64,000 nucleotides of DNA from Ascidiella aspersa (lineage: Eukaryota): contig OZ004610.1 in assembly GCA_963924565.1 (NCBI GenBank), positions 11,904,001-11,968,000 of the forward strand. Direction: 5' to 3'. Shown one piece after another: positions 1 through 27,303 of this stretch. The stretch's first letter is position 1. Each line of letters opens with the position of its first letter. Below the pieces are notes generated by a model. That model made no database searches and was not told where the DNA came from. It saw only the letters and a list, made by a program, of their open reading frames with translations. The position numbers and the translations under genes were made by a program.

Positions 1-221
1 CACGACAAAATCTGCTTATTGTGCTGTTTAGAAGAAACAAATCATAGCTTTTGCTCAGAGCAAGAAAAGCGTAATATGAACTTACACTTTCGACCTTTTA
101 TGATGAGTGTTCTCTAAACTTATGTATAGTCGACTAATCCCTTTTTTTCAATCGTAATCTATCGTCTTAACTTAACGCAATCAAATTTTAATATCTTGCA
201 GACATAAACTCAGGCACTTAC

Positions 222-3200
222 CCAAGCACTGATGAACGACACCAGACCAAGACCCATTGCTTCGGCATTTCCTGGATTCCAAAGGGTCTGCGTTGTATCC
301 GGCGTGACAGCGCACTGTGCATTCAGAAGAAACTCTAAAATTCCCATCCGCATCCTCCATTCCAGTGCACTCAACGTAACCGTTATTTGGGTCAGACAGC
401 TTAGGGCAGGTCACAGCTTCATATAACAGCAAACGTTGGTTAGATTTGTTTTTCGGATTTTCTATTAACAATTTCCGTAAGTGTAAAACTATTAAGTTAA
501 AAATGTCAAGGGTTTTATGAAAAGAAATCAGACACAACAAATAACCCCTTTTGACATTATGTGCGTTATACGCATGTATGAGACACCAAAGTTCACACTG
601 AATGCTTGAAAACGGCGATTTAATGCCCTTGTAGTGATATTTGGTTAGTTTATAGTAAATTGTCATTCGTCTTCAACCGGGAGGATTTTTTCCTTTTAAA
701 TCTATTTTAATTTTAGCCAATTTTCTCACGTCTGCAAACTGGAGCGACGTCGGACCAGGTGCGATTCGCCTGACACACTCGAAGACCAGGGCCGACCAAG
801 AAATGGTTACCATTGCAACGGTAACGGCACTCGGATTGCCAGGAAAGGTTTTGGTCGCACACGATGTCTCCGTTGTCGGGCGGTGTTAGCTTGGGACATT
901 GCCACTCTGGAGTGCAAATTCGTATGTTCATATTCCGTTATAGCGTCTGATCAGCTTTTTAGTAGAGTAGTCTATGGCAAGCGGAATGAAATTAACCATG
1001 TTGTTCAGCACAATACATGTAGAAAAAGTAGGCCAATTGAAGCGTATCGCAAATTAGTAGTAATAACAGTGATGCGTTAAAACAGGCTATATTTTATTTG
1101 GGCTAAATTAGTTCACCTTTGTTGCCAAACGGTACGACTCCCGGTGTACTTTTGGGGTTAACATTTCGTAAAACTTGTTGTAAATTTAAAAAATAATAAT
1201 AAGTTGTTTTCTCGCTTCGCGCGATTTTTTGTAAGACACGTTGTTTCACCTTGACAGATGGCAAGCATGCCTGACCAATTTCCATTGTCCTGACACGTTC
1301 TCGAACTTGAACCGAGTAATTCGAAGCCAGGATCGCAAGAAAACAAACACGTTGAACCGTAAGCAGATATGCCGTCAGTTCCTAAACATTCCATATTTCC
1401 GTTCAGTGGAGGGTTCAACGCTGGGCAAGTTAGAACTGCAAAATAATAAAAGGGGCCTAAAGTCTTAACCTTCAATGTACGTCGGACCATACTATAGTGT
1501 CAATCAATTAATTGATATAATTTTGTATATGAGAGTCGCATGTTTTTTTTACCATTTATTTATTTTCAAATACTTTTCTCTATAGATGCTTGTTTCTCGT
1601 CATTATCAACTATAGGATTTGTAGAGAATTCGTATTTAACTCTATAAGTTGAAAATAGGTGTATTTAATATGAGATGTTGAGAGTCAACGATAACATTAG
1701 TTGGTTTGCGTTTCGCATTTCAGTTTGACACAAGTAACATCCGTGGTACCTGCACACTTCGCCTTCGTACCAGACCAGGTAGCATTTCTAAGGCAAACTC
1801 TTGTTTCTGACCCGGAAATGACGTAACCTGCCTGACAAGTAAAGTTACAGGTACTTCCGTACAAAGACTCGTTTGTGCAGATGGTCGATCCGTACAAAGG
1901 ATTTGCAAGACGAGAACAGTTGATCACTAAAAACATTTCAAATTAGTTCGTGTATTTTATTGAAAGTGGTTTAGACTATTTTAATTTAAGCCTTTAGGAC
2001 CCAATGTCAAGGTTCACAGAGTGCATAATGCATTTACTTAGTCTTACTTTAATTGATTACCGTTCTTTGCGATAAGAGTTCAACCTTGTTAGTTAAATGT
2101 AACTGTGAATACATTTTCTCCTTAAAAATCCTGTTCTAACAAACGTTTGATGCAATTCTGTAAGCCAAAGACCGCACCAGACCCACAAGTTTTCAAATTA
2201 GTGGATAGTTTATTAACAGGAATTTAAAACTGTTGTGTTGGGAGGTACGAAAGAGCGACATTCTAAACTGGAGACTACATGTATTGAATGCTGTTAATGG
2301 GACAATAGTACTTAACGAACCTATGCAATCGGACTCTTCACCCGTCCACGATCCATTCGCCTGGCAAGCTCTGAGCGTGGACCCTCGTAATGTGGATCCC
2401 TCGCTGCACGTGGTTAAACATTCACTGCCGTATGGTTGCCACTCAGAAGCTACGGTAGCACATTCTGTTTTTCCAAGTGAAGGGTTTCGCAAGGGTGGAC
2501 AAACGACGGCTGTGGACAAGCAAAATGTCGTGTTAATCAGCAGCTAAAGTGAGATGTCCGTGAAATATGTATGCGAGAACTTAAGGGATGCGAATATAGA
2601 TTTTAATGTTAAATATATTTTCTTTATTGTTTTAAAAACGAAGTTTCTTTTTTTAGTGCATTTTCAATACCGCTTTGTTTTAAACGTTTGCGTTTAAGAT
2701 CTAACAGATGAAACGACATTATGACACAATGTAGGCATTGCTTTCTCACATGACCAATAAAGGGACATTGTATAACACGTTTTGTTGCAACGGCAAAACA
2801 TGGTAAATGCATGATGGTACCGACTGAGCAAACTTTGGATTGCAATCTTACTGGGGAATAGGTATCTCTATGATTATTCTCTGATAGCCGCGTTACAACA
2901 CAAGTATAATAGAAACACAATTTGTGCTAAAAAATATACCCAATTTCGCAAGGTAAATTTTTTAACAGCAATCGCTTTGTGTCTACGTTTCTCAAACCTA
3001 CTTTAAATTAACTAGATTAACTATAGAGAGCTACTTAAATGAAAACACAGCAACGCCAAACTTCACGGGTGACATTTTTACCTGAGCAGTTTGCATCGAT
3101 ACCGCTCCAGCTGCCGTTGGACTGACACACTCGGAAATCAGAACCGCTTAACTTTGATCCGGTGCTGCAACTGGTAAAGCATTCGCTCTTGTAGGAATGT

Positions 3201-6200
3201 ACCCCGTCAGGTCCGCTGCACACAGTTTCACCTAGTGACGGATCGCTCAGTAGTGGGCACTCGACAGCTGAATAAAAAACTAGCACTGTGAACAACATAA
3301 CCTAACCTCAGCTACACACATAGTCACCATAACCTCTATTCCTTACTTTAGAAAATATAGTTTAAATACAACTTTGCCGCTTGACAATGTTTTCGAACAC
3401 CTTGTCGGTAGCCTATTTGTTTGAAAACTATTTTACATGATTCGATCCAGTGCCCTAACCGTGTAATTTTCAACGTGTGTAATTGCTAATGTATATTTGT
3501 TTTATTTATTTGCTATTGGTTGTAAGTTGCTATCAGAACGTTCGCTCTAAATTTGTCAAAACGTGCACACATTTTTTTGAAAATAATGTTAAAAAACGCA
3601 ACTAACGAAGTCATCATTAGTTGTATAATTTCAATGTTGTTATGAAAGTTTGACTGGTTTGATATTGCTAATTTTCTGTTATAGTTAGCTACATAATATT
3701 TTACTACACGTAAAATCGAAAGTTAAGTTTTACATTTACAAAAGTAAAAGTATTTTTGTCAACATACGTCTGCAATGGTTCTCCCCTCCGCTCCAGGTTC
3801 CATTTGATTGACAGATTGTCTCGCCAACTCCCAAAACCCGGTAACCAACGTCGCAAGTCAATATGCATAGGCTGGGATACATTGAACGGCTTGAAGCTCC
3901 AGAGCATTTGAAGGAACCATTGGAAACGTTTGCAAGAGGCGGACATTCGACAGCTAAAATTAGTTATCATTAAATGATTGTTGAGTTTCGTTTTGAATTG
4001 CGGAACACCGATAAGCAAACTTGTTTTAACCTTTAATTACATTTTTAGTATTTTTTTTTTTTTTTTTTTTTTTTAACAACTGTAAACGTTAACCATTACG
4101 CACCACTCTCTGCAGCAATTTAGCAAGCTATGGGGTTACACTGAAGGTAAACCTGAGTGTCGTTTAGTACCAAACCATTTTAAGGTGGCTATATTAATTG
4201 TGTCACTAAAATAGTTTGACTTGTAAAAATGAAAAAAGGTAATCCATTCAATACAAGGTAACCGTAAAACATGTTTCCTAAATATGTTATAAGACGTATG
4301 CAACGCCACAACGGGCTACAAGTGTGCTTGCAAACTTAGGCAAAACATACGTTCGCAAAGTGTATCTTGTCCAGACCATGAGCCGTTCACCAGACAGGCC
4401 CGTAGCGGGGAACCACGCAGGTCGAAACCTTCTGCACATCGAAAGGAACAGACACTGCCGAATGTGGAATCATGCTCTGAGTTGTTGCAGTTCTTCGCAC
4501 CATAAAGGGGCGTGGAAAGCGCCAAACAAGGTTTTGCTAAACAATTGGATAAGATTTTGGAGAATAATGGTTAGAGGTTGTAGTGAGACGGAATAAGAAT
4601 ATCAAATCCTATAAAGAAGTCGGTATCATTTTGAACGTTTCGATTAACTCTTTATTCATTTTCAACATAATTGGATAAGAGTTATTTGTAATGAAATTGC
4701 ACGAAAGTGAAAAGATAAAACGAAAATCTAGGCCTTTAAAATGGGTTCATAGGAAACGTATTGGGGTCCGCGCTTTAGTTTTGCGTACACTTGGTGAAAT
4801 GAAATGTTAAACCTTTAAAAAAATGAATGTTAAACCTTTAAAGCAGTGGTTCTCAACCTGTGGTACGCGAAGTCATTTTGGGTGGTAGGCTATACGCAGT
4901 ATGTTTTTAAGCAAAATTACAGTTTTATCAAAAGGTTAAGCATTTATTTTATTGTAATAAGCTATACATTCATTATAATGATTGTATAGTTAAATATTTT
5001 ATGCTTCTTTAACGATAGGAATTGTTATCTTTCTGGAACATCTATGCAAATTTATTTTATGACATCATAGCAAAACAACAAAGAATTACAAACTTAACTA
5101 CCAGTATCTTGCAAGTTGAAAAAGAGAAACTTTTTTGAGTGTAGTGGGCCGCATTTGTTTTGAAATTTCTGGCCTAACTATAATTAGCTAATCCACCTCT
5201 TTTAATAATCCTATATAGCCTTCATTTTGAGTAAAGTTGATTTTTTCGACAATTTGTTGGTACGCAACAAGATCATAGAAGCTCGAGGTGGTACGCGGTG
5301 AAAGAAAGGTTGAGAACCAGTGCTTTAAAGGGTAACAGCAAATTGTGTTTCGAAATAGCCCTTGCTAATCGGTGATTAATCGTTTAGCCATTAGCGTTGG
5401 GCTACCTCTATTACCTTTGCATGTTCCAGATTCGTCTGTCCACGTCTGATTATCCTGGCACTCCCTGAAGGCATTTCCTAACAAGAAATAGCCAGCACTG
5501 CAATTGACTGTACAGTTTGCTCCTATGGCGTGTGGACCGCGGTCACTGAAGCATTCGACGGAAGCGCGAAGCGGAATCGTTGGTGGTGGACAGGTTTTAA
5601 CTGCAAGGAAAAATATTCGTTGAATAACGTAGATGCAAAAACGACTTTTCTAAAGTGCTATTCAAATTGAAAGTGTGTATTAAAGGACAAGCGTAACGTT
5701 TACTTGACTGGTTTGACCTACTCAACTTAGCTTGATAAACATAATTTAGTATATATTTTAGTTACAGACTAATCAAACAAGAACAGTTATGGCATAATGG
5801 ATTTTCTCGCATCTGCCCCAACAAAAAAGACTTAATGTTTCAAAAAGTGACTATCGTAAACTTGAGACCATAAGTCTAAACATTTTACGTTTTAAAACCA
5901 AAAATGACAACACCGCGCATTGCCACATAACATTAAAGTAGCGCTTAATAAGAAACAGCATTACTTTGACAAACAGCATCTTGTCCGGTCCATGAGCCAT
6001 TTTCCGTGCACTCTCTTTGTCGAGAACCAACCAAGTTAAAAACTGCCGGACACGTAAAGGTACAGATATCACCGAATGAAAGCGCTTCTTGAGTTTTGTT
6101 GCATTTCATTTCGGTGAGCGGCGGTGCAGTCAACGGCGGACAAGTAACAGCTGAAAACATGATAAAGTTAATTTTTATTGGCCGATATTGGCCTACTATT

Positions 6201-9200
6201 TTCAAGGTGAACTTTTACGAATAAGTTTGGTCTTACAAGCAAAACAGGGCAAATTTAACAGTTTAAAATATAACCTAGCTCAGTTCCAATTTTGACCAAA
6301 TTAACTTAATTTTTTCGGGATTAAAGCGCTTTAGTTACTATCAAAAACCAATTAATTAAATTTTCCCCTAGGGTGAAAACGTTTTTTATGTCCCACATTA
6401 TGGCCACCTGTAATAGTAGGCTATAAGGTTCCGCAACTACAATACTGTAAAAAGCTTCAACTAGAGAAAAGGCTGTTTTCTATATAATTTTTAGTCCAAA
6501 TATGCTAACGTTTTAATGAATACCAGCACAAGTTGCACGACTTCCACTCCAAGTGCCATTTGCTTGACACAACCTTAACTTCGAGCCGTCCAGAAAAGAA
6601 CCGGTACTACAGCTTGTTTCGCATTCACTACCGTAGCTGTTGGCTCCATGAAGACCGCTACACGTTGTTTCACCGAGTTGAAGATCTCCCAACAGGGGAC
6701 ATTTCACCACTGAAGTTAAAACATGTTGTGTTAAATAGCTGTTGAAATGTAATCAATTTAATTTGAATGTAATTTTGAAATTGTTGGAATAGTAGTGAAT
6801 GTTTGCTTATAGCCTTAGTGTCAATATAGTGTCAACTTGATAAACTTAGGGGGCGGAAAGACACGATTTTTTTTCTCCAATTGAACAACATATATTTGCT
6901 GTATCTATTTTCGGTGATGATTTGCAATTACCCCATATTCCATGCCGATATTGTGCTAGGTCTTTGTTATTTAGTTTTTTTAGGTCAAAAAATCGTCCTA
7001 CTCATTATACAATTGCAGTTGTCTATATTGCTTTACTTCTGAGAATTATTGAATTGAATGTTTTTTTAAATAACATCGCATGAGCAATCCAAATGTACTA
7101 TCTACTCTGCTTAACGTACCTGCACAGTTCGATTGTTTTCCACTCCAGATGCCACTTCCTTGACAAACCCTTAACTTGGAACCAACTAAAATGAAGCCAT
7201 CGTCGCAAATTGTATCGCATTCGCTGCTGTAGAAATTCGACCCATACAAACCGCTGCATTTAGTTACACCCCAAGCAGGATTTTGCAACACCGGACACTC
7301 CACAGCTATCAAAGAAAAAACAAACAATTTGAAACCATTTTCTATTACTGATCTGCATTTCTTATTGAACATAAAATCAGTTGCGGCCTTACGTTGACAG
7401 GTCGAAACCATGCCCGACCAGGTGCTATTCGCCAGGCAACGCCTTTCCTTGGAACCTACAAGGTTGTAACCGAGATCACAAGTGAAACGGCAGATCGCAT
7501 TTGTTGTCCAAGGACCTTGCTCTCCGAGACATTCCAGGGCGCCGTTTAAAGGACTCGACAACTGCGTACAAGTCGTCACTGCATAGCAAATGATACAACT
7601 TTTCCTTGATGTTTTGATATTCATTTTTCGCGTTATTCCATCCTATGTTTTATATCAAGCCGCAGAACTTTAAATACCCAACTTGTGGTGTACAAAGCAA
7701 GATTTTCATCAGACAAAAATTTTAAAGTTAAATGCATGATTCCAAGTTTGAAACAAATTCTACTGAAATAAATATTGCTAGACACAACTGTTATAGAGCG
7801 TTATTTAAGCGTTTTCTTATCATCGTACAACTAGGTACGGTATAAATAAAATGTCAGTTTATTTTTTAGGTTAACTACGGACAAAATAATAAATAAAATC
7901 ATCGGAATCACCCCGTTAGATAGCTTCATAAACTTCTAACCTTTGCATAGCGCTCTCTCGCCGCTCCATGTCCTGTTAGCGAGACATTCTCTAACCTTCG
8001 ATCCGCTCAATCGAAAGCCAACATCGCATGTCGCAACGCAAACGTTGCCATAATACGCGTCGCTCCGGTGGCATTCCATCTTTCCGTTAAGCAATGAGGA
8101 GAGAGACCCGCAAAAAATTGCTGTTGTGGGAATTTAAAAACCAAACTTATCACTCTTTAAAAATTTATTAATAATACCGTACATTATTTTCATTGTTTGT
8201 TTTACGAACTATGCCTGTTTCAACACTGCCGGTTGCTGATGTTTTTCACAAGATTAAAAAATACAATAACTAAAACACACACAATACTTAAGTGACGACA
8301 AGATTGACATCACAACTCCTGGTTAAAAGCTACGAAATTTGAAGTAAATACATCATTTTAAAATACATCGCAGTTAACGTAATGATTTTCATAATGGTAT
8401 TGCTATAATAAGGACATTGTAAGAACTTCAACCAAAGTTTAGGAATATATTTCTGTGAATTAAATGCAATTAAATTTGACTAATGGAAATTTTCCTTCGC
8501 TAAAACATTTTTAATTTCATTTACGAATGACTTACGTTTACACACAGCGCCTTCTCCCGACCAAGATCCATTTGATTGACAGGTGAATAAACTTAGTCCG
8601 TCAACCTCATAACCGTCGTGGCATTCCAGTGTACAGTGGCTGGAATAGGCGTACAAGCCCAAATCCCCAGAGCAGTTAAAATTACCATTGGAAATGTTTC
8701 CGACTGGTGAACATTGGATAACTGATAAGGTGAAATAAAAATGGTTAGAATGCGCAACCAGTCCAGCCTTTCAACTAAACCATAATCACTAGTTTTGGTG
8801 CAATTAATAAAACACGACTTTTAAAAATAAAACTAATCATTGCCATTACTATTAAAAAATAACAAATTAAGAAAATACGGTCAGATTGTTTGTATGCACT
8901 TTTGTAGCAAGAAACATACCTTGGCAAACTGTTTGCACGCCTGACCAGCTGCCATTGTTTGAACAAGTTCTTTGATTGGAACCTAGCAGCTCGTATCCAG
9001 ATTCGCAGGAAAATGTGCAAGTCGCACTTTGTGAAAATGGCCCGTGGGCGCCGACGCAGTCCATGTAGCCATTGTTGGGAGGTTTTAAAGCCGGACACTC
9101 AAAAGCTGCAAAAGTGACTAAACAGTTCAAGTAATGCAGAAATGCTCGTATTGTGGTTCCCAACTTTTGTTAAAGTTTGAACCGAATGAATAACTGATCG

Positions 9201-17607: not shown

Positions 17608-18417
17608 TCTCGAATTAACCCGAATCCAGTCTCCGTGTATAAGTGTTTAAATAACTCGCGAACGTTTCAAATAACGTTATATCACTCCAATGTAAATTTG
17701 AAAACAAGCGACATGTACATACGACCTTGATATTTCGGACTGGCATTATGTTTTTTTACTTCTCCCTGCATGGCAAGTACGCATATGTGTAATGGCATTG
17801 CAATCAAAGTCGCGCTGTAGCTTCTAATGAGTTGTGTGAGACTTGATGGACCTGGATTTTAACCCCGGGCGCACTTCTAATGCAGCGCAGGAAATTGACG
17901 CGATACAGGCAATAATCTTCGTGAAGGTTCCATTTGTGTAGACTTTTGTGACAGAGCATAATAGCGTCGTGTCGTGGTTCACTTTGATAGTAGCATGCAA
18001 AGTGTTCAGTATTGTTTCACAGCCTTGACCTTATTAAAAAACATGCTCAAATATCCCCATTTTTTCATGTAAATTCCTTAAATATGGAAACAATAGGTCA
18101 ACATGCAAACTACGGCTTTGTCCCTAATGTAACAACGACAAGTTCCTTCATGATTCAGATCCCTATTTGCTATAGTGTCAATGTATATTAATATTATTGC
18201 AAGATGTCACCAATCATTAATTGAGACAAAACAACTTTATACAATAGTAGCCTATATAGAACAATTGTTCAATCTCTTGAACATGTTAAAGTTGTTCGGC
18301 CATTTTACACATCAGTTGTATATAAACCATTTTAAAAAGTAAACGTTGTAATTTGTTTTAAGAGATACCTAAAGTTGTAACAACAAAAGCGACAAGTCTT
18401 CAGGCTACATTTTAAGT

Positions 18418-18461
18418 TTTATTAGCATTTGTCTGGAATCCAAGCTGATGGCTGATTTATT
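18418..18461 (-). terminator. Candidate polyadenylation signals of gene A
   Basis: AATAAA on the minus strand at 18456-18461 and 18418-18423, ~400 nt after the stop codon. Confidence 0.4.
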
Positions 18462-18836
18462 CTAAACCTGCTGGAGTTTAATTTGAAGCCTGCTTGATCG
18501 CACAAAGTAGAACGGCTAATTGGTTAATTGGAGTTAACAACAAGGTTCAAGCACGCTTTAAAATGTATTTGGCAATACAGCAAATACCGACAGATAAAAC
18601 ACCGATATAACATGCAATAAACATCTCTGTTATATACAAGTTGGCAGAAGAAAAAAGTGAAATATTTGTGCCTTGGGGTACTGCAGAGATACAAAAATAA
18701 ACTCACAACATATATTTCATTTACACGTAAAGATGGTGCTAGAATTTTTCAATTAACTGTCCGATATTAAGGTTAATTTCAGTTGGCCTACTAATAAAAA
18801 ACAGTGAAGAAAAAATGAAGGCAAAGTTGCAGTTAG

Positions 18837-19877
18837 TTAGCACTGGACACTGCAGACTTGGTCGGCCACGTTCGTCACGATTTCGTTAATGTCGGAAACC
18901 TCGGCCAGGCTGTAGATGTTGTCCTTAATTGGCTTGGAAGCGATGACACTGAGATCTTGCAAGTGTGAGCCAGTGATGCCGATTGCGATCACGTGAGCGT
19001 CCGAGTCTCTCAGTATTTTTGCTGCAGTAAGAAATGAAATACAGTAAGAAATCGAAACAACGCGCACTTCTTGGCCAATGTATTTTAAGCTGTTTGCGAG
19101 TTTATACCGATTGTGCCGGCTGACAATTTATTTATTAACCAACTTACCATTGTTGACAAGGTCGTCTTTTGCGTTTCCGTCGGTCAGAACGATCACTACT
19201 TTCTGGATGCCAGGTCGGGCTCCCATTAAATTAGTTGCGACGAAGTTCAGCGCTTGACCTTGGTCAAAAATGACAATGTTTACTGTGTAGCTTGTTTCCC
19301 TTTTATGCATGTTGTGTATTTCTTAAAGGTGATTAGTTGACTTTTATCTCGTTCAAGATTTTTTTACCGAGCACAAAAAGAAGCGCTATTTTATTAAACT
19401 TATAGAAAAGTTCTCCTTCGGCATTTAATAAACGTACTTGCCACATCAAAATTAACATTTAACGAAAAAACAGACTTAACAGCGCATATAAGTCTTTTTA
19501 GGTCAAGGAAAAACGAAAAAGGGGTCAACTAACCGGCGAGCGTTCCCTTGCCAGAATAGTTGAGCTGTGAGATAGCGTCGTCCACTTCTGATTTATTAGC
19601 GTGCCAGAAGCGGCCGCTGGGCACGTATACCACAGAGTCGAATCCCACCAACGAGACTTGAGTAAACTTTGCGCTGATCTCGAAAGCGCTGTACATCTGA
19701 GAAAAAGAAAAAATAGGGTATAAATGTGCACGCCGCTTAATAGAAGGGAATGCATGTGCCCAGCTTTACTTACCGATTTGGTGAAATTGATGATGGTCTG
19801 GAAGTTTACTTCGCCGATGCTACTGGAACGGTCGACGACAAACACTAAGTTCAGTCGAGCCTTTGGTGGACATTCGT
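18837..19877 (-). CDS. Gene A C-terminal VWA domain (4 exons) with intact MIDAS
   Basis: [14 protein letters not shown] (DxSxS), GKGTLAG (T), VVIVLTDG (D), VIAIGI; stop TAA at 18837-18839. Confidence 0.9.
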
Positions 19878-22800
19878 CTGTTTTATGAATAAACAAATTT
19901 ATTCGTTGTCCCGAAACATTGGATTTAGGACCCAACTTAGCGTTTCAGTTTTGATCTACCGATCACGAGATTTTATGACAAATCAACTTAGACGGCCACT
20001 CTCATATTAAGATGACCTTAATTTTTAGGATCCTTTTAGGAAACAGTACCGCCATACAATTGGTGTAAAAAAAGTTTTTCACAATAATATCACATTTTTT
20101 TTCTTAGTTGGCAAAGCCACTTATATGTTGCGTCGCACCGCGCGTGGTTTGTTAAACTTTTTAAAATGGGGTCCATTTTCTCTTGTTAAAGGGAAACCAA
20201 GTCAAATACCTAAACAGCAAGGCTTTCGTCCGCTCCAGTCGAGGTCGGGTTGGCAGATCACTTGACTGGTTCCTTGCAGCAGGTAACCGTCGTTGCATGA
20301 GTACTGACATACAGAGCCGGTTTTGTGCCCGTCACTGCACATCACTGATCCGGCGTTCGGGGCAACGACAGGCGGGCAAACCGATTCTAAAAGAAAAACA
20401 GTCTTTATTAAATAGAAGCAGCTTTTTCGTGCGGAGATCGAATTTCGACACGCTCAGTTTTACCAATATGTCGTGAGCTTCAACAGTGTTTTGTCGCATT
20501 TGTACACTTACCAACGCAAACCGGGAGAATGTTGTCCCAGGCCATATAAGGAGCGACGCAGGTGACAGACGCAGATGGCCCGATCAGTGTGAAGCCTGGC
20601 TTGCACGTGAAGGTACAAGTCGAGCCGTTTCTCCAGCCGTCCGTGCATTCTACGTTTCCGTTCGGCATACCGGCGAGCGCGGGTTGGCACAGAGTGATTT
20701 GTTCTGTGGAAATTGTAAAGAAGACGTTAGTTAGATGTTTCATTCCACAATTATTAAGTCACCTAGTTATGACTACTTAAACAGGAATTTATATGTTTGA
20801 GAGATGACATACATGGTCTATTGGCCTATAAATGTGTTGCATGTAACGTTACATTAATTAAGGAAATCTAGAGAAAGCTTTTACTATGGTTGGAAAGGAC
20901 ATATGACACATAAAAGAAAAGAAAAAAATAAACGCCGTACTTCTTTTCATTGACAATCGGAGTAATTTTCTAGTTAGCCAGTAATGTTATTATATTGTTT
21001 TGATTTTGCGGCGCTGCTTTGTTTACGAGTGCGCCAAGCGTAATAAACTCTCTGTTTTTTATTTTATTACTGTTGGGCTGATAACGTACCGTTGGTTTTC
21101 TCGCTATCGCACACGTATCTCGCAAACTCGTTGCAGTAGAGGTCGACCCAGAGGAAGTCGCGTGTGTTGAATTTGACGGGATCAGACACAAGATGGACGC
21201 ATCGCGCACCAGTACCTGAGACAAGTTAACAAACCTATTGATCTGAGCAAAATAATTAGTTGAAAGACAAATAATATCAAAGCAAATTGTTGTCAAAGTC
21301 ATGCAAAACATTTTGGTGAGGCAAGTTAAGTTTTGTAGCCTAATTCAATGAGACACGTAAATATATCGTATACCCTTTACGCACCAATTTATTAGAAATA
21401 CATTTTTTAAATTAATTCTATTCGTTGTCCAGCTTTGTGCGTCACAAAGTTTTCTTATGTTCAGATGAATGCGTTGTTGTAATGGAATATCGTAAGTTTC
21501 TTAAATGGTGATCATTACACAAACGGAATGTCGTAAGTTTCACAAACAGTAATAAATAAATAAACGACCTGCTTAACAACTTACCCCCGCGAATGCTCGG
21601 TTGTTTGGGAGCCCACATCTGGTAGTCACGCGGCAGAAGTGGGGCTCCGTCTCTCCATCTGAGCTTTCCTGGCTCATAACGGTCGTCGAGTCCGATCCAG
21701 GGTCCGAGAATCACGGTGGTCAAGTCGTTGAGGGGCACGAGTTTGTTCTGCCGAATAAAAATCAGGACAAAGTCAGGCAACATGCTTAAATTAAGGTTTT
21801 AATGTGCCGTATAAATATATGCTTTCCGTTTGAGTATAGTTATATGTTCATTTTGTTTTACACTGCCGCAAATGGTTCGCGAGCAGCTTTTAATTCTCAT
21901 GTAGAGTTAAATTAACGGAAATGTAATCTTCATTAGGCTGCGGTAAGTTACATTCTTTCATTGTCGCTTTGATTTAGTCTAGAATCTGGTGCTATATTGC
22001 AAGGCTTTTATTCATTTTTGTTTTGAAGAATCTCGGTTTATTTGACCTGGGTTTTATACAGAGCAACGTTTGAGAAGCAGTCAGTTAATTAAAAATTATC
22101 TTAAAAAAATGCCAAATTTGAAAAAAATAGGAAAAACCTCAGCCAAAAAGAAAGGATGAATACAACTCACCAGGAGGATGGCGTTAAGTGTGTCGTACTC
22201 CTCCTTGGTCTTGATGGAAGCCGGATGTCCGCTCTCAATGTTTGCGCACGCGTCCGATGCGGTGTAGGAGGGATGCTCGGGATCAACCACCAGGTACTTG
22301 AAGCAATACTCGCCCTGGAGAAGCTCGTGAGGTGGGCAGGGAAGGTCCAGTTCTGGACAGGATAAACAAATGTTTTGGACATTGCAGTACATCAAATGCA
22401 TTAAGTTAGAGCAGTGTTTCTGAACCGGGGTACCGCGGCACCCTGGTGTGCCATTTCTAATGCTCAAAAAAAAAAAAAAAAAAAAAAAAAAGGTGTCGAT
22501 AGGTAATTAAGAAAGGGGGTGTCGAAAGGTAATTAAGAATTTTTAGAAACCTGATTTTTTAGGAACTTGATTCCGAAGAAAGCAGGGGGTACGACATGTA
22601 GTGTGAAATCATGCGCTATTAGGCATATTTGTGAAGAATGCATAATTTACGAAAAGCAACAACAAAAAGCCATTAGTAAATTGTCTGATTGTTTGTGTGT
22701 TGTAAATATTGTTAAACTTACAAGACTGTATTTATTGCGTGTATTCAACAAATAAGTTATAAATTGATTGAGCTTAATTCGGATTATTAAAATTCTATTT

Positions 22801-25800
22801 ACATTCTAGACAGGGGGTACGAGAAAATTTCATCTACGCTCAAAGGGTACGAGCGCTAAAAAGGTTAAGAAACACTGTTCTAATAGAAACAGATATCTGT
22901 TTTGCACGATACGTCAGTATCCTGATAAAGACGTTCTGTATAGCACGTCGAAACGTCGATCTATTATATATTCTGCTGGAAGAGCAACACTCCGTTATAT
23001 ATTATGCCTGGCAGCAATAGCTTATTTCACACTGTTCTAAGTTGGTTGTTTGGTTCCAGTTCCATTTATAGTGACAATTCAGTAACACACTCAACGAAAA
23101 TTCCAGTCAGGCGCCAATCTATTTATTATTTTTGAGGCGGGCGTAAGTCATAAAAGGTTGAGAATCACTGAGTTGGAGAGTTAACAAATTTTGCGTCTAC
23201 GTCTGTTTTAGCAATGAAACGATGCGAAAAGCGATGGCTGTCACTATATTTATAGTTTAAATTATTGATCGATTATAGGTCAGTTTTCTGTAAAAGTTGC
23301 TTCACTAACTTTGCAACCGAACTTTCATTTAAAGTCAATTGGCTACAACTTCGAACTATGTTAACCCAAAATAGCATAAACCTATAAGGCTATAGATCAG
23401 CGGTTCTCAACCAGTGAGCCATGGCTCACTGGTGGGCCATAAGAGCATTTGAGGTGGGCCACATTTGAGGATGGCTTGGTGAGAAATTAAAAAGGAATAT
23501 AATTTTTTTGTTCAGCCGCAAGCATCTCACTAATGCAAAGTTGAATAAATAATCTGTTTTGAAATATATTCTGCTGTGTTTTGTTCTAAACCTATTTTAC
23601 AGTTTTTTCTTTCATAAAACTTTCGGGCCACAGAATTTTTTTGCAACGTTAATGGGCCACGAAAGACAAAAGGTTGAGAACCACTGCTATAGATATTGTC
23701 GTTGATTAAAAACCAATACAGCAGCAAATAAAATTGCGTGAACGCCTCGGATAAATGTTAATTTATTTTAACCGAGGCGGCATAAAGTTGCTTTAACACT
23801 TTAAGCACAACTCTAATCAATTGTTCATGTGTCCCTTACCCATTCTTCTAAATATGTCTTCAACAAGCTTCAGCCACTAAACACTTGATTATATTTACTT
23901 GTGCAGTTCCTGCCATCGCCGATGTACTCGGGAGCGCAAGTACATTCGAAAGATCCCGGCGTGTTCACACAAATTCCGCCCTCCTCCGAACTCATACAGT
24001 CATCCAGCAGCTCGAGACACTCGTCGATGTCCACGCAAGAGAAGCCGTCTCCGCGGTAACCAGGAATGCAGGTGCAACTGAACAGTGAAAGCATTTGGCT
24101 ACTATTACAGGTGGCATTTTTGCGAAACTTTCTATATATTTAAAAGTTGAGGGCATTCGGCTGGTAGCATACAGATTCAAAAAAGGGAGATGGAGCCTGT
24201 AGTGTACAATGAGACTTACTATGGCCATATCGCACTGCTGTTGCGTAACTCTTTTATCCCCCCCGAAAAAAGTAGAGGAATAAATTATTAGCGCGGGATG
24301 AAAATATGAGAACATGAAATATAAATTTTAGAAGGAAATTATTACCTTGCTTGCAGAAGGGAAGTTCCCCGATCCATTCCTTGGTGATGAAATCGCAGAT
24401 GATGACGTCATTGCCCTGGAGCGTGAAGCTTTTGTCGCACGAGAAGGAACATATGGAACCGACCCGGTTCCCATCGGTGCAGGATCCGGCTCCGTTGACC
24501 AGATTCAGTACTTCAGCGGGAAGTTGGTCGCAAAGCACTACAGGAAATATATATTTTATTTCTATCTCCTTCATGTTTGATTGATCAAGGTTTTCATCTA
24601 ATGCGAACATGTTTTTTCAACTGTTAGGGATAACTTCGGTTTTCGGTCTACTTATGGCAAACCAGTACTTGAGTGAAATTACGCACAGTTACGCCCGCAT
24701 ATAAGCCAACAAGTGTTCTTAGGCTTCTAAGATTTATGTGATTTGTATCTATAGTATGTTATTTCTGTCTTATTTTAATCAGGGACCTACAAACGAATGA
24801 CAACGTACTGAGTTTGCATTGCGGATTGTTATCCCAATCTGGAATTTCACCGGCGCAAGTCGCTTTGCTGCCTCCGTTGGCCTCGTAGCCCGGATCGCAA
24901 ACAACTGTGCAAGTGGAATCCAGTTCAGTGCCGCTGGTGCAGTCCACCTGACCGTTCTCCACCGAAAAGGGGCGGCAGTTCACTACCTGAGTCTTTTCAG
25001 CAACTGTAAACGCAATAAAACTTGGATTATTTTGAAAATGAAGTTATTTTTGAAAAAATAAAACTAAAAACAAAGCTTTTGAGCATAATGGTTGGAGGTT
25101 GTAGGAAGACGATCATTTTGAACGTTTCTATGTTTACTTTAGTCACTATGTTGGCTATGTTGACTATGTTGAAAATGAATAAAAATTATTCGAAACGTTC
25201 AAAATGATACCTTCTTCTGTATAGGCTTTGATATTCTTATTACGTAAAAACAAAGCATTCTTGAATAAATCGTGTCACAAACTTTTGCATGGTTAACGAC
25301 TTAGAGTTCCAACTTCGAATTTAATTTACTGTTAGAAAGACTACGTTCCACGACAACGTTTTTGTCGTACTTACGAAGGCATCTTGGTTTTGGGAAGGAC
25401 CATATCTTGGACGACGCGTCGCATGTGACTACCCCTGTGCCGAACAGATCGTAGCCCTCGTCGCAAACGAACGAGCAAACCGAGGAAAGTCTGTTAAAGT
25501 TGGTGCAAGCAGAGCTTCCGCTTCGTGGGGGTTGCGTCATCTTTACGTCGCACGCATCGCACGACTCGTCTGGTCGAGGTAAAAGTATTATTAAAGGTTA
25601 CTTTAAAGTACACATAATGTATTGAATCAAATACTTTGGGAAATGCCGTATTTTAAAGTCAATGGTTAAAATTAATTCTTCAAGAATGGCCGCAGAAGAT
25701 GGGGCGTTATCATTTTTGCCTCAAGCTACTTTTTCTTGAATATCATGCAATGTTTAAACTTTAAAGGCTATAGAGGATTCATGATTTTATTCGATAAACT

Positions 25801-27303
25801 CGTTGAATTTGTTTAATGTTTATCCGATTTTTAATATACCTAGATAGAATTGCCCTTTGTATTGACTTTAACTCACCGTTTTCATTTCAAATGGTAAGAA
25901 AGTATAACATTTCAAGCAGCTAGTTATAGAGTCGCAAACTTGCAAACAAATGTTAACCTTATATTGACCAGTGACAGCATTAATGGCAGAATCAGTATAT
26001 CCTCATTCAAATAAATAATGGATTCATCTATTTATCTATCAGAACAGTGTTGCCAGTCCACATCTGATCACACAAGTGGAGGCGACAATGTATCTCACCA
26101 TAAACGCATCTAGCCTCCTCTCCCGACCAGACCCGTTCGTCCATGCACATCCGTCGATCGGTTCCTTTCAGCCTGTAGCACTTGTCGCACTCGAAACTGC
26201 ACACGTCCGACTTTACATCGTTGTTGTACGAGCAGAACATTTTGCCGTTCCTGGGCGCTGACAGCGGGGAACAAGTGCGTTCTACATAAAGGCACGAGCA
26301 GGTTGAGCTACCAGCCGATCGGGACAAAATAAATTAAAATACATTAGGGCATATTTTGGAATTAATTTTGCAACAGATGTTGGCAAAACGGTTATACATC
26401 ACTGCAAGGTCTTTAGCTGGTTTACTATGTTACTGATAAGTGTGCGAGTTATATCAAAATCGGATAACCGCCCTGGCTACGTTTAGTACTTACGCTTCAT
26501 GTCTCCGTTGCAGCCTGGCGTGGAACAGCAGTGTCTGCAAACCGACAGTGGCGAGTTGGCGATCGTGTTGCACTGAGTGATGGGCCATGCTTGCATGTAG
26601 TTCTGCTTCTCGTTGTTCATGCAGGCGTGTGTTTGCTTGCAACCCTGAAAAGACAGTTTTGTAGTCAAATATTGGCAATGTACTTTTCATTACAACTAGC
26701 AGCTTTTGGACACCAGGCGTAATAAGATTGGAAGTAAGTTAACTCTGCATCCAATATGTGGCTTTTCGAAATTATATCCGCCATGTAGGCTAGCCTTCAG
26801 ATAAGGACTTAAAAATGGCGAGAACAACAAAGTGTTGGTGTTGTTTCAATGAGTAAACAGGCCACTCCGATATTGCTAATCAATTCCAATTAGAAAGAGG
26901 GGATTAACCTACACCTACCTTGTTGATGATGATCTGCAGCTTATGGTCGGTGTTCCACACGCGGATCTCGGTCTGGCACGACTGCTGTGAGGCCTGACAC
27001 GTGACCAGGTTCCGGTTGCATTCCTCGTTGCTGCGAGCGTTTCGGCAGGTGAAGCACTGCAGGTTGGTGGAGCTCTTGGCCAGGATAGAAATGCCGAGAA
27101 CGCAGCTGGGTAGGATGGCCGCCAAGCACAACAACGCTGCACGTGGAATTAAGCGGTTAACTCGCATACTTACCATGCCGTGCGCCGCTGCACGGTTACA
27201 AGAGCGATAAAAGCATATTCACTACAACAAATTAAATGAGGGTTTAGTATCAGACGAGCTTAATAGAGAGAGACTTACATTGCACATTTAGATTTAGAAT
27301 CAT
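18837..27303 (-). CDS. Gene A: secreted mosaic protein SP-LU(Ly6/uPAR)-CCPx4-halfEGF-cbEGF-CLECT-CCPx2-VWA, 18 exons, ~923 aa
   Basis: Exons: 27279-27303, 26919-27136 (or in-frame acceptor at 27187), 26494-26644, 26099-26281, 25375-25569, 24809-25003, 24346-24537, 24220-24250, 23899-24077, 22171-22352, 21585-21747, 21090-21215, 20512-20703, 20210-20386, 19774-19877, 19534-19696, 19148-19258, 18837-19021. Junctions are GT-AG and phase-consistent; total 2772 nt. N-terminus [23 protein letters not shown]; no transmembrane segment before the stop. The start exon (27303 versus the ATG at 27176) and the 31-nt exon are the least certain parts. Confidence 0.85.
21090..22352 (-). CDS. Gene A C-type lectin domain (3 exons)
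   Basis: [30 protein letters not shown] / [22 protein letters not shown] / [19 protein letters not shown]. Confidence 0.88.
22412..23170. mobile_element. Composite hAT MITE with one left end and two right ends
   Basis: Left TIR CAGTGTTTCTGAACC (22412). Right TIRs GGTTAAGAAACACTG (ends 22877) and GGTTGAGAATCACTG (ends 23170). The TSD matches only the outer end (AGTTAGAG / AGTTGGAG). GGGGTAC motifs and an internal poly-A are present. Confidence 0.7.
23398..23686. mobile_element. hAT MITE (same family as 14569-14893)
   Basis: TIR CAGCGGTTCTCAACC / GGTTGAGAACCACTG; TSD CTATAGAT on both sides; GGGCCAC subterminal repeats. Confidence 0.92.
23899..24077 (-). CDS. Gene A calcium-binding EGF exon
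   Basis: [27 protein letters not shown]...[23 protein letters not shown]. Confidence 0.9.
26494..27060 (-). CDS. Gene A LU/three-finger domain (12 Cys)
   Basis: [62 protein letters not shown]. The N-terminal CxxC and C-terminal CCxxxxCN are the LU signature. Confidence 0.8.

What the first reader, a model, noticed from the sequence alone, without database searches (positions are those of the whole stretch)
222..27303. Tandem pair of secreted genes fusing a 12-Cys Ly6/three-finger head to CCP arrays: candidate uncharacterised recognition or complement-control family
Seen: two adjacent same-strand genes begin with a signal peptide and a homologous LU domain (shared CQTEIR, KGCKQxxACxNNxxQN, WxxxQC, SVCRxCC..GCN), then diverge. 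A carries 4 CCP, EGF, C-type lectin, 2 CCP and VWA; B carries >=27 CCP. The LU head of B is invisible in the ORF track because it is split over three small exons. Established: in vertebrates LU (CD59, uPAR, Ly6), CCP arrays (factor H, CR1, selectins), C-type lectin and CCP+VWA (factor B/C2) sit in separate proteins, and LU proteins are usually small and GPI-anchored or secreted alone. Inference: this is a lineage-specific system with a conserved three-finger head on interchangeable stalks, one short and adhesive/lectin-bearing, one very long. Possible roles are innate immunity, allorecognition, adhesion or tunic/matrix assembly. Automated pipelines would probably label both P-selectin-like or SVEP1-like and miss the LU head.
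Basis: partly seen in the sequence, partly recalled or inferred. Interest (0 to 1): 0.8.

Follow-up and report, generated by a model that had tools for sequence, protein, structure and literature searches.

The report
Sea-squirt three-finger-headed Sushi-stalk proteins
Two neighbouring sea-squirt genes encode secreted proteins that carry a Ly6/uPAR-type three-finger domain in front of a chain of Sushi modules; they belong to a large family found across tunicates, which databases label "selectin-like" or "SVEP1-like" without seeing the head, and which very probably includes Ci-sushi, a Ciona gene already studied in metamorphosis.

Summary
Gene A (window 27176-18837, minus strand) reads signal peptide, 12-Cys LU head, 4 CCP, EGF, divergent CTLD, 2 CCP, VWA. 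Gene B (17607 to beyond the left edge) reads leader exon, 12-Cys LU head in three exons, about 29 CCP, a short WSxW exon and a C-terminal QPD/WND C-type lectin domain. Every splice phase fits. All 34 CCP segments match Pfam Sushi.

A family member with the same head folds confidently as a three-finger domain (LYPD6B Z 10.5; Lynx, CD59, uPAR and snake toxins follow).

The pair is not isolated. A head profile finds 257 protein clusters, and every named head-plus-Sushi hit is a tunicate. The window's own genome gives 101 exon-level matches. The usual layout is LU-(CCP)n-VWA. Gene A has collinear orthologues in Ciona, Clavelina and Styela.

Public names are SVEP1-like, CSMD1-like and P/E-selectin-like, and Pfam misses the head. 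Published Ci-sushi qPCR primers translate to two head motifs found in one Ciona-lineage LU-CCP-VWA protein, so one member has probably been studied functionally.

No RNA support was obtained for this locus, and function remains inferred. Other windows of this genome were also flagged for LU mosaics. Verdict: a real, unnamed domain architecture of a familiar kind, of moderate interest.

The parts
26919..27176 (-). Gene A exon 1: start codon, signal peptide and the N-terminal half of the LU head (Cys 1-5, ...[21 protein letters not shown]); donor AAG|gtaggt, phase 0
   Evidence: Pfam Toxin_TOLIP 26.7 bits (cut-off 21.2), UPAR_LY6 E 2.9e-4, UPAR_LY6_2 (Lypd6) E 7.7e-4.
26494..26644 (-). Gene A exon 2: C-terminal half of the LU head (Cys 6-12, [15 protein letters not shown]...[17 protein letters not shown]); acceptor cag|GGT phase 0, donor C|gtaagt phase 1
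   Evidence: Head profile E 6.3e-19 in the own-genome search. 62-65% identical to the Ciona and Clavelina orthologues.
24257..26333 (-). Gene A CCP modules 1-4, one exon each, inside open segments 26333-26031, 25597-25304, 25043-24762 and 24616-24257
   Evidence: All match Pfam Sushi. Phase-1 acceptor of CCP1 fits the exon 2 donor. Collinear with Ciona P0025.
23873..24139 (-). Gene A EGF / calcium-binding EGF exon
   Evidence: Pfam EGF_3 2.9e-15, cEGF 3.1e-11, EGF_CA 6.6e-10.
21070..22506 (-). Gene A divergent C-type-lectin-like domain in three exons (within 22506-22099, 21783-21442, 21225-21070); has the WIGLDD and Cys framework but no EPN/QPD or WND motif
   Evidence: Middle exon matches Lectin_C at E 0.0088. 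77%, 48% and 71% identity to Ciona P0025 residues 516-679. A profile of the orthologues' region matches B's CTLD exons at 26.2 and 16.4 bits, in order. Full-length orthologues do not reach Pfam Lectin_C.
20205..20758 (-). Gene A CCP modules 5-6
   Evidence: Pfam Sushi. Collinear with the orthologues.
18837..19944 (-). Gene A VWA domain in four exons, with DxSxS (DRSSS), GKGT and TDG MIDAS residues, then the stop codon (18837-18839) right after ...VCSVQC
   Evidence: Pfam VWA on the first and last exons. Orthologues score VWA at 1e-30 to 1e-35 and end at the same ...QC. Sequence.
17574..17607 (-). Gene B probable leader exon: ATG, MKLLPVCIAML plus one base, consensus donor G|gtaagt (phase 1)
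   Evidence: Inferred from sequence only. It completes a signal peptide with the next exon; no RNA support.
17367..17473 (-). Gene B head exon 1: end of the signal peptide and LU Cys 1-4 (RWCYTCKDAANNAECNQQGMKECPINE); acceptor tttgcag|TT phase 1, donor GAG|gtagag phase 0
   Evidence: Pfam UPAR_LY6_2 E 0.026.
16273..16451 (-). Gene B head exon 2: LU Cys 5-9 (NWCQTEIRI...KGCKQETACKNNQRQN...LLSVC); donor AG|gtaatt phase 2
   Evidence: Head profile E 3.7e-19. No Pfam match on its own.
15893..15939 (-). Gene B head exon 3: LU Cys 10-12 (R)YCCGDKEKGCNEGLP; donor G|gtaatt phase 1, leading into CCP1
184..15335 (-). Gene B CCP array: 27 Sushi modules in the window, mostly one exon each and phase 1-1. 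The first two are atypical. The array continues left of the window.
   Evidence: every segment matches Pfam Sushi. Continuation in L024.
9495..10899 (-). Recent tandem duplication of a two-CCP cassette inside B's stalk (period 755-784 nt, exon DNA 87-91% identical); an older third copy at 11505-11671 is 70% identical
   Evidence: protein sequences.

Best explanation
A and B are two separate, intact genes for secreted modular extracellular proteins. They belong to a tunicate-wide family whose constant part is an N-terminal, divergent Ly6/uPAR (three-finger) domain. That head is followed by a stalk of 1 to about 29 CCP/Sushi modules and a C-terminal binding domain, usually a VWA.

Gene A is signal peptide, LU, 4 CCP, EGF, CTLD-like, 2 CCP, VWA. 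It is an old orthologue conserved in Ciona, Clavelina and Styela. Gene B is LU, about 29 CCP, a WSxW exon and a CTLD. Its stalk has recently grown by duplication of a two-CCP cassette.

The architecture, fold, family membership and distribution are shown. The mechanism is inferred. The C-terminal module fixes the protein to matrix or to a glycan-bearing surface: a VWA with an intact metal-ion site in A, and a calcium-type QPD/WND lectin domain in B. The semi-rigid CCP stalk sets the reach. The three-finger head at the far end binds a protein partner. The proteins would therefore act as extracellular tethers or cell-to-cell communication molecules.

The one probable family member with functional data, Ci-sushi, is described as a cell-adhesion or communication protein needed for tail-cell apoptosis at metamorphosis. 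The family arose and diversified by exon shuffling, because every module is a symmetric-phase exon.
For: Gene structure and phases.

Domains.

Gene A is collinear from head to C-terminus with Ciona XP_026690968/XP_078486624, Clavelina XP_076807524 and Styela LOC120338298. The 12 head Cys, the CTLD framework and the MIDAS residues are invariant.

Head fold: AF2 model of family member P0021 has pLDDT 82, about 95 in the core. Foldseek top hits are LYPD6, Lynx2, erabutoxins, LYPD6B, PSCA and uPAR. In the independent VIA search the top 39 rows are all three-finger folds; LYPD6B Z 10.5, Lynx1 9.5, CD59 8.6.

Family size and layout: 257 clusters at E <= 1e-3, with the head at residues about 45-120 of proteins 90-1955 aa long. 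LU-(CCP)n-VWA is seen with 3 to 25 CCP. Named members come only from Ciona, C. savignyi, Clavelina, Styela, Phallusia and Oikopleura. The own genome gives 101 exon-level matches.

Transcript-like contigs carry head, CCPs and VWA in one ORF with no room for introns, for example P0060, 1596 aa on a 5163-nt contig.

B's CTLD has QPD and WND. B's stalk cassette is duplicated.

Ci-sushi link: the primers in PMC4389792 translate to QACEANEA and SVCRCCC. Both occur in P0249, which reads signal peptide, LU, CCP, VWA. Its nearest relative is a C. savignyi protein.
Against: No RNA evidence for either gene at this locus. The one RNA run of the species showed no reads on B's exons or on the part of A's last exon that lay within the stretch (about 6% of the run was read and the tissue is unknown).

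The fold was shown on a 14-Cys family member, not on the 12-Cys A/B type. The full-length model of the Ciona orthologue of A was unusable in the head and in the CTLD (pLDDT 20-45 from a 7-sequence alignment).

Pfam does not detect the head in full-length family members. Sequence similarity to solved LU proteins is weak (Lynx2 E 0.2).

A's CTLD is supported only by motifs, one sub-threshold Pfam match and a profile match to B's CTLD.

No binding partner, localisation or phenotype is known for A or B. The tether mechanism is inference from domain types.

The Ci-sushi identification rests on two primer translations, not on a transcript alignment.
Confidence: 0.6

Rival explanations
1. Humoral immune or complement-regulating proteins. 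The CCP array would act like factor H, CR1 or DAF on C3 convertases and the LU head like CD59. Alternatively the CTLD would act as a pattern-recognition end that opsonises microbes.
For: CCP arrays are the hallmark of complement regulators. PDB hits of the CCP region include CR1, CR2, DAF and factor H. CD59 is among the structural matches of the head (Z 8.6), and Pfam CD59 matches A exon 1 weakly (E 0.011). B's CTLD has a canonical QPD/WND sugar site. The family is large and clustered, as immune families often are.
Against: No test was possible. The head is closer to LYPD6/LYPD6B/Lynx than to CD59. CCP modules are common in adhesion and matrix proteins. Gene A is conserved one-to-one across ascidian orders, unlike fast-evolving immune genes. 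The probable studied member, Ci-sushi, acts in metamorphosis.
Confidence: 0.15
2. Tethered signalling modulators. The LU head acts like vertebrate LYPD6 or Lynx, binding and tuning a cell-surface receptor. The stalk and the VWA/CTLD only place it in the matrix. The family would then control developmental events such as metamorphosis.
For: The best structural matches are LYPD6 (6gbi), LYPD6B and Lynx1/2. Exons A1 and B1 weakly match the Lypd6 Pfam model. Ci-sushi, the probable LU-CCP-VWA member, is reported as a JNK target required for tail-cell apoptosis. Other SVEP1-like genes change at tail regression in Ciona.
Against: Fold similarity does not show a shared ligand. Sequence identity to LYPD6-type proteins is about 20-29%. 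There are no expression data for A or B. This idea overlaps the best explanation and differs only in what the head does.
Confidence: 0.15
3. Gene-model artefact. The LU exons belong to small separate LU genes, or to alternative short transcripts, lying upstream of ordinary CCP genes.
For: No RNA of this locus was seen. Retaining the intron after exon A2 would stop translation three codons later (...DMKRKY stop) and give an LU-only secreted protein. B's leader exon is only inferred.
Against: Splice phases fit at every junction in both genes. No anchor signal or independent end follows the head exons. RefSeq and ENA models of three other ascidians join head and stalk in collinear orthologues. 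Intron-free contigs encode head plus CCPs plus VWA in one ORF. The head sits at residues about 45-120 of long proteins in well over a hundred clusters.
Confidence: 0.05
4. Allorecognition or self/non-self determinants, as with the CCP-bearing fester genes of Botryllus.
For: The proteins are CCP-containing and extracellular, the family is expanded and clustered, and B's stalk varies in length by cassette duplication.
Against: Both proteins are secreted, with no membrane anchor. Gene A is a conserved orthologue across orders. Polymorphism was not assessed beyond ordinary intronic SNPs in one DNA run.
Confidence: 0.03

Closest known systems
Vertebrate single-domain Ly6/uPAR proteins, especially LYPD6, LYPD6B and Lynx1/Lynx2
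   Same: Three-finger fold with the C-terminal CC...CN signature. They are the best structural matches (LYPD6B Z 10.5, Lynx1 9.5, Lynx2 8.8; Foldseek top hit 6gbi, LYPD6). There are weak Pfam matches to the Lypd6 model.
   Different: Those proteins are small, and by my own knowledge GPI-anchored or secreted alone. Here the domain is the N-terminal module of proteins about 1000 to 2100 aa long, with 12 or 14 Cys and a family motif (K.CKQ..AC.NN..QN ... SVCR.CC). Sequence similarity is only marginal (E 0.2 to Lynx2).
SVEP1/polydom and CSMD proteins (the names given by annotation pipelines)
   Same: Long secreted or surface proteins built of many CCP modules with VWA and EGF. SVEP1 is a matrix adhesion protein (my own knowledge).
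   Different: No pentraxin, HYR or CUB domains were found in the family members scanned. In the family the VWA is C-terminal. The LU head has no counterpart in SVEP1 or CSMD.
Selectins (CTLD-EGF-CCPn-transmembrane)
   Same: Gene A and the selectins both combine a CTLD, an EGF and CCP modules. Pipelines name many family members P- or E-selectin-like.
   Different: The domain order differs: in A the CTLD is internal and lacks EPN/WND, and in B it is C-terminal. There is no transmembrane segment or cytoplasmic tail. An LU head and a VWA are present.
Ci-sushi (Ciona KH.C11.274, 'P-selectin-like'), a JNK target required for tail-cell apoptosis at metamorphosis
   Same: Very probably the same family. 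The published primers translate to QACEANEA and SVCRCCC, and both lie in the head of P0249, which reads signal peptide, LU, 1 CCP, VWA.
   Different: It is a minimal member (419 aa, one CCP, a VWA without the DxSxS motif, a 14-Cys head). It is not an orthologue of A or B. The texts I could read describe it only as a sushi-domain adhesion or communication protein and do not mention a three-finger head. The original 2007 paper is not held.
Complement factor B/C2 and the regulators of complement activation (factor H, CR1, DAF)
   Same: CCP modules next to a VWA (factor B/C2), or long CCP arrays (factor H, CR1). PDB sequence matches go to CR1, CR2, DAF and factor H.
   Different: No serine-protease domain. 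The extra LU, CTLD and EGF modules are absent from those proteins. No functional link was tested.
LU domains inside other mosaic proteins: the TGF-beta/activin receptor ectodomains, and echinoderm and hemichordate proteins found here
   Same: A three-finger domain serves as the ligand-binding module of a larger protein. ALK1, ActRII and TGFBR2 are among the structural matches. The CKQ..AC...SVC.CC..CN motif also occurs in Holothuria (4 copies, top profile hit), Ptychodera and Diadema proteins.
   Different: Those proteins have other partner domains (kinase, Apple/PAN, LDLa, adhesion GPCR). None of the named non-tunicate hits joins the head to a CCP stalk.

Membership tests
Ly6/uPAR (LU) / three-finger domain superfamily | Cysteine framework of 8-10 or more Cys, with an N-terminal L.C..C and a C-terminal CC....CN | tested here: met
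   A: LQCFTC ... [14 protein letters not shown]: WCYTC ... SVCRYCCGDKEKGCN. Both have 12 Cys, all at family-invariant columns.
Ly6/uPAR (LU) / three-finger domain superfamily | Significant match to a curated LU/three-finger profile | tested here: inconclusive
   Exon A1 alone reaches Toxin_TOLIP at 26.7 bits (cut-off 21.2). UPAR_LY6 scores 21.7 against a cut-off of 24.8. B's exons score E 0.026 or nothing. Full-length family members do not match. The joined head was not scanned, because spliced models were searched exon by exon only.
Ly6/uPAR (LU) / three-finger domain superfamily | Three-finger beta fold | tested here: met
   Tested on family member P0021 (14-Cys type): pLDDT 82, and every top Foldseek and VIA match is an LU or three-finger structure. 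Not shown directly for the 12-Cys A/B type, because the model of A's Ciona orthologue had pLDDT 20-35 in the head.
Ly6/uPAR (LU) / three-finger domain superfamily | Small protein made of LU domain(s) only, GPI-anchored or secreted (the typical vertebrate form) | tested here: not met
   The head is followed in frame by CCP exons. Orthologues are 980-1110 aa.
CCP / Sushi repeat | Match to Pfam PF00084 with the four-Cys and Trp framework | tested here: met
   All 34 segments (6 in A, 28 in B including 2 outside the window; one of B's window segments holds two modules) match at E <= 0.001.
VWA domain with MIDAS | VWA profile match plus the DxSxS, T and D metal-site residues | tested here: met
   VWA matches on A's first and last VWA exons. 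Orthologues score 1e-30 to 1e-35. DRSSS, GKGT and TDG are in A and invariant in the orthologues.
C-type lectin domain (gene B, C-terminus) | Lectin_C profile match and the Ca2+/sugar motifs (EPN or QPD, and WND) | tested here: met
   Three consecutive exons match Lectin_C positions 3-33, 41-76 and 76-106, each at E about 1e-3 to 4e-3 and below the cut-off alone, in order and with fitting phases. QPD and WND are present. The exons lie outside the window, in L024.
C-type lectin domain (gene A, internal) | Lectin_C profile match and the Ca2+/sugar motifs | tested here: inconclusive
   Only the WIGL exon matches (E 0.0088). The orthologues' profile matches B's CTLD exons at 26.2 and 16.4 bits. The Cys framework is present but EPN/QPD and WND are absent. 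The AF2 model is of low confidence there.
SVEP1/polydom | Pentraxin and HYR domains together with CCP, EGF and VWA | tested here: not met
   No Pentaxin or HYR match in A's orthologues or in other family members.
Selectins | N-terminal CTLD, then EGF, then CCPs, then a transmembrane segment and cytoplasmic tail | tested here: not met
   The order in A is LU, CCP4, EGF, CTLD, CCP2, VWA, stop. B ends in a CTLD and a stop. No hydrophobic C-terminal segment is present.
Complement factor B/C2 | CCP3, VWA and a trypsin-like serine protease | tested here: not met
   A stops right after the VWA. No Trypsin match in the orthologues.
Tunicate LU-(CCP)n-VWA/CTLD family (defined here) | Signal peptide, an N-terminal head with K.CKQ..AC.NN..QN and SVCR.CC..CN, then CCP modules, then a C-terminal VWA or CTLD | tested here: met
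   A and B both fit. The family is documented.

The most novel reading that the evidence does not exclude
The family is a tunicate invention of matrix-tethered three-finger ligands. A LYPD6/Lynx-like head, held at a set distance from matrix or glycan by a CCP stalk of evolvable length, tunes cell-surface receptors and so times events such as tail-cell apoptosis and metamorphosis, as Ci-sushi may do. A second possibility is that it joins CD59-like and factor-H-like activities in one chain as a complement regulator.
Probability: 0.15. Interest if true: 0.7.

Novelty: new variant of a known kind. Interest (0 to 1): 0.45.

Why it matters
The result gives a name and a definition to a large family that tunicate genome annotations scatter under misleading vertebrate names (selectin, SVEP1, CSMD1, CR1, matrilin). 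The family has dozens of genes per genome and occurs from Oikopleura to Styela. All members share a three-finger head that standard profiles miss.

It probably re-annotates Ci-sushi, a gene already tied to the control of metamorphosis, as an LU-CCP-VWA protein. That points experiments at the head as the likely ligand-binding part.

It is also a clean example of exon shuffling and cassette duplication setting stalk length. It shows that LU domains in invertebrate deuterostomes are ordinary building blocks of mosaic proteins, not only small GPI-anchored proteins.

It does not reveal a new kind of molecular system, and no function has been shown for A or B.

Tried and rejected
- RNA support. The one RNA-seq run of the species (X4) was laid on window 13000-18999. 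It covered only high-copy repeats in B's introns and no exon of B, nor the part of A's last exon inside the stretch, so it neither supports nor refutes the splicing.
- Fold of the A-type head. I folded the full-length Ciona orthologue of A with its 7 orthologues. The head and the CTLD came out at pLDDT 20-45, which is unusable. I did not hand in cut-out pieces of proteins, because the tool admits only whole returned proteins.
- Joined models. Joined (spliced) head or protein models of A and B were not built, scanned or folded.
- Pfam on full-length family members does not see the head.
- A profile of the head against PDB sequences gives only Lynx2 at E 0.2.
- phmmer of the Ciona fragment P0156 against PDB lists only VWA and CCP chains among the 60 best shown, with no CTLD.
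- An exon-level tree of the heads is weak. It places A with its orthologues (support 0.90) and B elsewhere, so I rejected a recent A/B tandem duplication, with low certainty.
- One gene rather than two was rejected. A has a stop at the same C-terminus as all its orthologues, and B has its own leader exon.
- Chambon et al. 2007 is not held.
- Literature searches for LU plus CCP in tunicates found nothing.

Full report
WHAT IS THERE. The window is G000:C4:11904001-11968000 of a 308-Mb genome. Earlier follow-up notes in this scan call that genome a tunicate (sea squirt), and the closest protein relatives found here are all tunicate. It has no N runs. On the minus strand, open segments with GT/AG borders define two genes.

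GENE A. Exon 1 (27176-26919) encodes [28 protein letters not shown]..., a signal peptide, and then [48 protein letters not shown]. The donor is AAG|gtaggt. Exon 2 (26644-26494, acceptor cag|GGT) encodes [50 protein letters not shown] and ends in phase 1. The next exon starts in phase 1 (gtag|AA CGC ACT TGT) and is CCP1. After that come:
- three more CCP exons;
- an EGF/cbEGF exon (EGF_3 2.9e-15, EGF_CA 6.6e-10);
- three exons with a C-type-lectin framework ([21 protein letters not shown]...RWRDG, RCVHL...WVDLYC...YVCD);
- two CCP exons;
- four VWA exons with DRSSS, GKGT and TDG;
- a stop right after ...VCSVQC.

GENE B. The head lies in three exons:
- 17473-17367: ...ISPTVTNGRWCYTCKDAANNAECNQQGMKECPINE;
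- 16451-16273: NWCQTEIRIRRDVAGTPKILIKKGCKQETACKNNQRQNNKTEWEPAQCDHDGNALLSVC;
- 15939-15893: (R)YCCGDKEKGCNEGLP.

The phases are 0, 2 and then 1 into CCP1. The first head exon has no ATG. About 100 nt upstream I found ATG AAA TTG CTG CCC GTC TGC ATA GCA ATG CTA G|gtaagt (17607-17574). In phase 1 this joins the acceptor tttgcag|TT and completes a signal peptide. This leader exon is inferred.

The window then holds 27 CCP segments. I fetched the DNA to the left (L024 = C4:11894001-11904000). It holds two more CCP exons and a phase 1-1 exon, DCSWYWSEWDNCDNKP..., with no Pfam match. After these come three exons that match Lectin_C positions 3-33, 41-76 and 76-106, carrying QPD and WND, and then a stop. 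All phases fit.

All 34 CCP segments match Pfam Sushi.

IS THE HEAD A THREE-FINGER DOMAIN? Exon A1 alone passes Pfam's cut-off for Toxin_TOLIP (26.7 against 21.2 bits). It also matches UPAR_LY6, the Lypd6 model and CD59 more weakly. B's first exon matches the Lypd6 model at E 0.026. The C-terminal halves match nothing in Pfam.

Instead I built a profile of the Cys5-Cys12 part from single exons of A, B and paralogues in the same genome. I searched it against 1.84 billion representative proteins and obtained 257 clusters at E <= 1e-3 and 93 at E <= 1e-10. The match usually lies at residues about 45-120 of proteins 90 to 1955 aa long.

A 135-aa member made of signal peptide and head only (P0021) was folded with an alignment of 47 members. 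Mean pLDDT was 82, and about 95 over the core. Foldseek against the PDB returns only three-finger structures at the top: LYPD6 (6gbi), Lynx2, erabutoxins, LYPD6B, PSCA, uPAR and TGFBR2. An independent search of 48,161 chains with VIA-align returns 39 three-finger/LU rows before anything else. These include LYPD6B at Z 10.5, Lynx1 9.5, GPIHBP1 9.4, Lynx2 8.8, and PSCA and CD59 at 8.6.

The family head is therefore a three-finger domain. A and B align to it at all 12 of their Cys. They lack one Cys pair of the commoner 14-Cys form, reading CRHCC and CRYCC instead of CRCCC and having no Cys after CN.

One caveat applies. The 12-Cys type itself was not folded successfully. The full-length model of A's Ciona orthologue had pLDDT 20-35 in the head.

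WHAT FAMILY IS THIS? Counting Sushi modules in the hits with a local HMM, together with Pfam scans, shows a common layout: signal peptide, head, (CCP)n, VWA. The number of CCP modules ranges from 3 to 25. Variants have a CTLD in front of the head (Phallusia P0003, and P0012) or mucin-like tails.

Every named protein that joins the head to Sushi modules is from a tunicate. The species are Ciona intestinalis, C. savignyi, Clavelina lepadiformis, Styela clava, Phallusia mammillata and the appendicularian Oikopleura dioica. Weaker hits from a sea cucumber, a sea urchin and an acorn worm carry the same CKQ..AC...SVC.CC..CN motif in other architectures.

The names given by the sources are SVEP1-like, CSMD1-like, P-/E-selectin(-like), complement receptor type 1, matrilin-2 and uncharacterized. 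The precomputed Pfam lists hold only Sushi and VWA.

In the window's own genome the profile gives 101 exon-level matches at E <= 0.01, with clusters on C8 (21.34-21.54 Mb), C5, C3, C1 and C7. Loci I read there show head exons followed by CCP exons. Other first-stage notes on this genome had flagged LU mosaics too.

RELATION OF A AND B. tblastn shows that A is collinear from head to C-terminus with Ciona XP_026690968/XP_078486624 (LOC100182036), Clavelina XP_076807524 and Styela LOC120338298. In their alignment the 12 head Cys, the CTLD framework (WIGLD, RWRDG, four Cys) and the MIDAS residues are invariant, and all end in ...QC. A is thus an old ascidian orthologue group.

B has no clear orthologue among the representatives. 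Its head is 50% identical to A's over 36 comparable positions and 51-58% identical to several other members. A weak exon-level tree places A with its orthologues (support 0.90) and B elsewhere. The two genes are family members lying 1.2 kb apart, not a recent duplicate.

B's stalk carries a tandem duplication of a two-CCP cassette. The period is 755-784 nt and the exon DNA is 87-91% identical. An older copy is 70% identical. Stalk length is therefore still changing.

A's CTLD is divergent. Only the WIGL exon matches Lectin_C (E 0.0088), and the orthologues do not reach Pfam. A profile of the orthologues' region does match B's CTLD exons in order, at 26.2 and 16.4 bits. It lacks EPN/QPD and WND, so sugar binding is doubtful.

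TRANSCRIPTS. One RNA-seq run of the same species was available. About 6% of it was read and laid on 13000-18999. It covered only high-copy repeats in B's introns and no exon. This says nothing about splicing.

Indirect support is as follows. RefSeq and ENA models of three other ascidians join head and stalk. Several database proteins also sit on contigs too short to hold introns. Examples are P0060 (1596 aa, head plus 17-19 Sushi plus VWA, on 5163 nt), P0112 (860 aa on 3290 nt) and P0140 (1005 aa on 3276 nt).

LINK TO A STUDIED GENE. Searches of the held library found no paper that describes LU plus CCP proteins in tunicates. Ci-sushi (KH.C11.274, 'P-selectin-like', cluster ci0100139289) is described differently in the papers I could read. 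[quoted passage not shown] Two others describe it similarly (PMC8495957, PMC13225635). All cite Chambon et al. 2007, which is not held.

The qPCR primers printed in PMC4389792 translate to QACEANEA (forward) and SVCRCCC (reverse complement). The second is the family's head signature.

A search with a family alignment returned P0249 (419 aa). It contains ...CKQKQACEANEAQN... and ...NSVCRCCCNDDLCN... 25 residues apart. It reads signal peptide, 14-Cys head, one CCP, VWA. Its nearest relative is a C. savignyi protein at 57% identity.

Ci-sushi is therefore very probably a minimal member of this family. This rests on two primer translations, not on a transcript alignment.

HOW IT LIKELY WORKS. The following are shown: the proteins are secreted and have no membrane anchor, the head is a three-finger domain, the stalk is made of CCP modules, and the C-terminal module is a VWA with an intact metal site (A) or a QPD/WND CTLD (B).

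The rest is inferred from what these domain types do elsewhere. The C-terminal module would fix the protein to matrix or glycans, the stalk would set the reach, and the head would bind a protein partner. The proteins would then be tethers or cell-communication molecules, which agrees with how Ci-sushi is described.

Immune or complement roles and a LYPD6-like receptor-tuning role remain open. A gene-model artefact is unlikely.

VERDICT. The 'system' is a large tunicate family of a familiar kind, a mosaic extracellular protein family built by exon shuffling. Its head has gone unrecognised, and one member has probably already been studied under another description. It is a new variant of a known kind, of moderate interest.

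Noticed in passing
window 14400-15000 and 15340-15800: High-copy interspersed repeats lie in introns of gene B. Summed contig depth in a DNA run is tens of thousands against about 57 for the flanks, and these are the only parts of the 6-kb stretch with RNA-seq reads. They are probably transposable elements.
   Followed up: no
window about 31000-59200, minus strand: The upstream neighbour looks like a laminin chain gene. An N-terminal laminin-type segment (...[21 protein letters not shown]...YCLQTG...CHMCN...) lies at 58723-59163, and coiled-coil-like segments lie at 31886-32950. The region is richer in G+C (0.42-0.49) than the LU-CCP genes (0.36-0.41).
   Followed up: no
window 26486-26494: If the intron after A's exon 2 were retained, translation would stop three codons on (...DMKRKY stop). 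That would give a free LU-only secreted protein and so a possible short isoform.
   Followed up: no
L024:8400-8540 (C4:11902400-11902540), left of the window: A phase 1-1 exon sits between B's last CCP and its CTLD. It encodes DCSWYWSEWDNCDNKPINTRSRSTIATFPHNDCNFTVVTQKE, which has a WSxW motif like a truncated thrombospondin type-1 repeat, but it has no Pfam match.
   Followed up: partly
G000:C8:21346000-21536000: A cluster of at least nine head-bearing genes. The head lies in three exons and is followed by CCP exons, and the copies are very similar to one another. This is probably the array noted earlier as s1-792909.
   Followed up: partly
L014/L015 (G000:C5:22616952-22624271): LU heads of the same family are embedded after calcium-binding EGF repeats, so the head is not always N-terminal in this genome.
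   Followed up: no
L022:2329-5109 (C4:11886329-11889109), minus strand: A single open frame of 927 aa made of repeated EF-hand-like units. It is the next gene to the left of B. A carboxyltransferase-like gene lies further left, in L025.
   Followed up: no
protein P0001 (Holothuria leucospilota KAJ8019844.1): The best profile hit of all (E 8e-33, four matched stretches) is a sea-cucumber protein that UniRef names as Apple-domain-containing. Here its N-terminus matched Pfam CD59 and Toxin_TOLIP. It has several LU domains carrying the same CKQ..AC motif, so this LU subtype is older than tunicates.
   Followed up: partly
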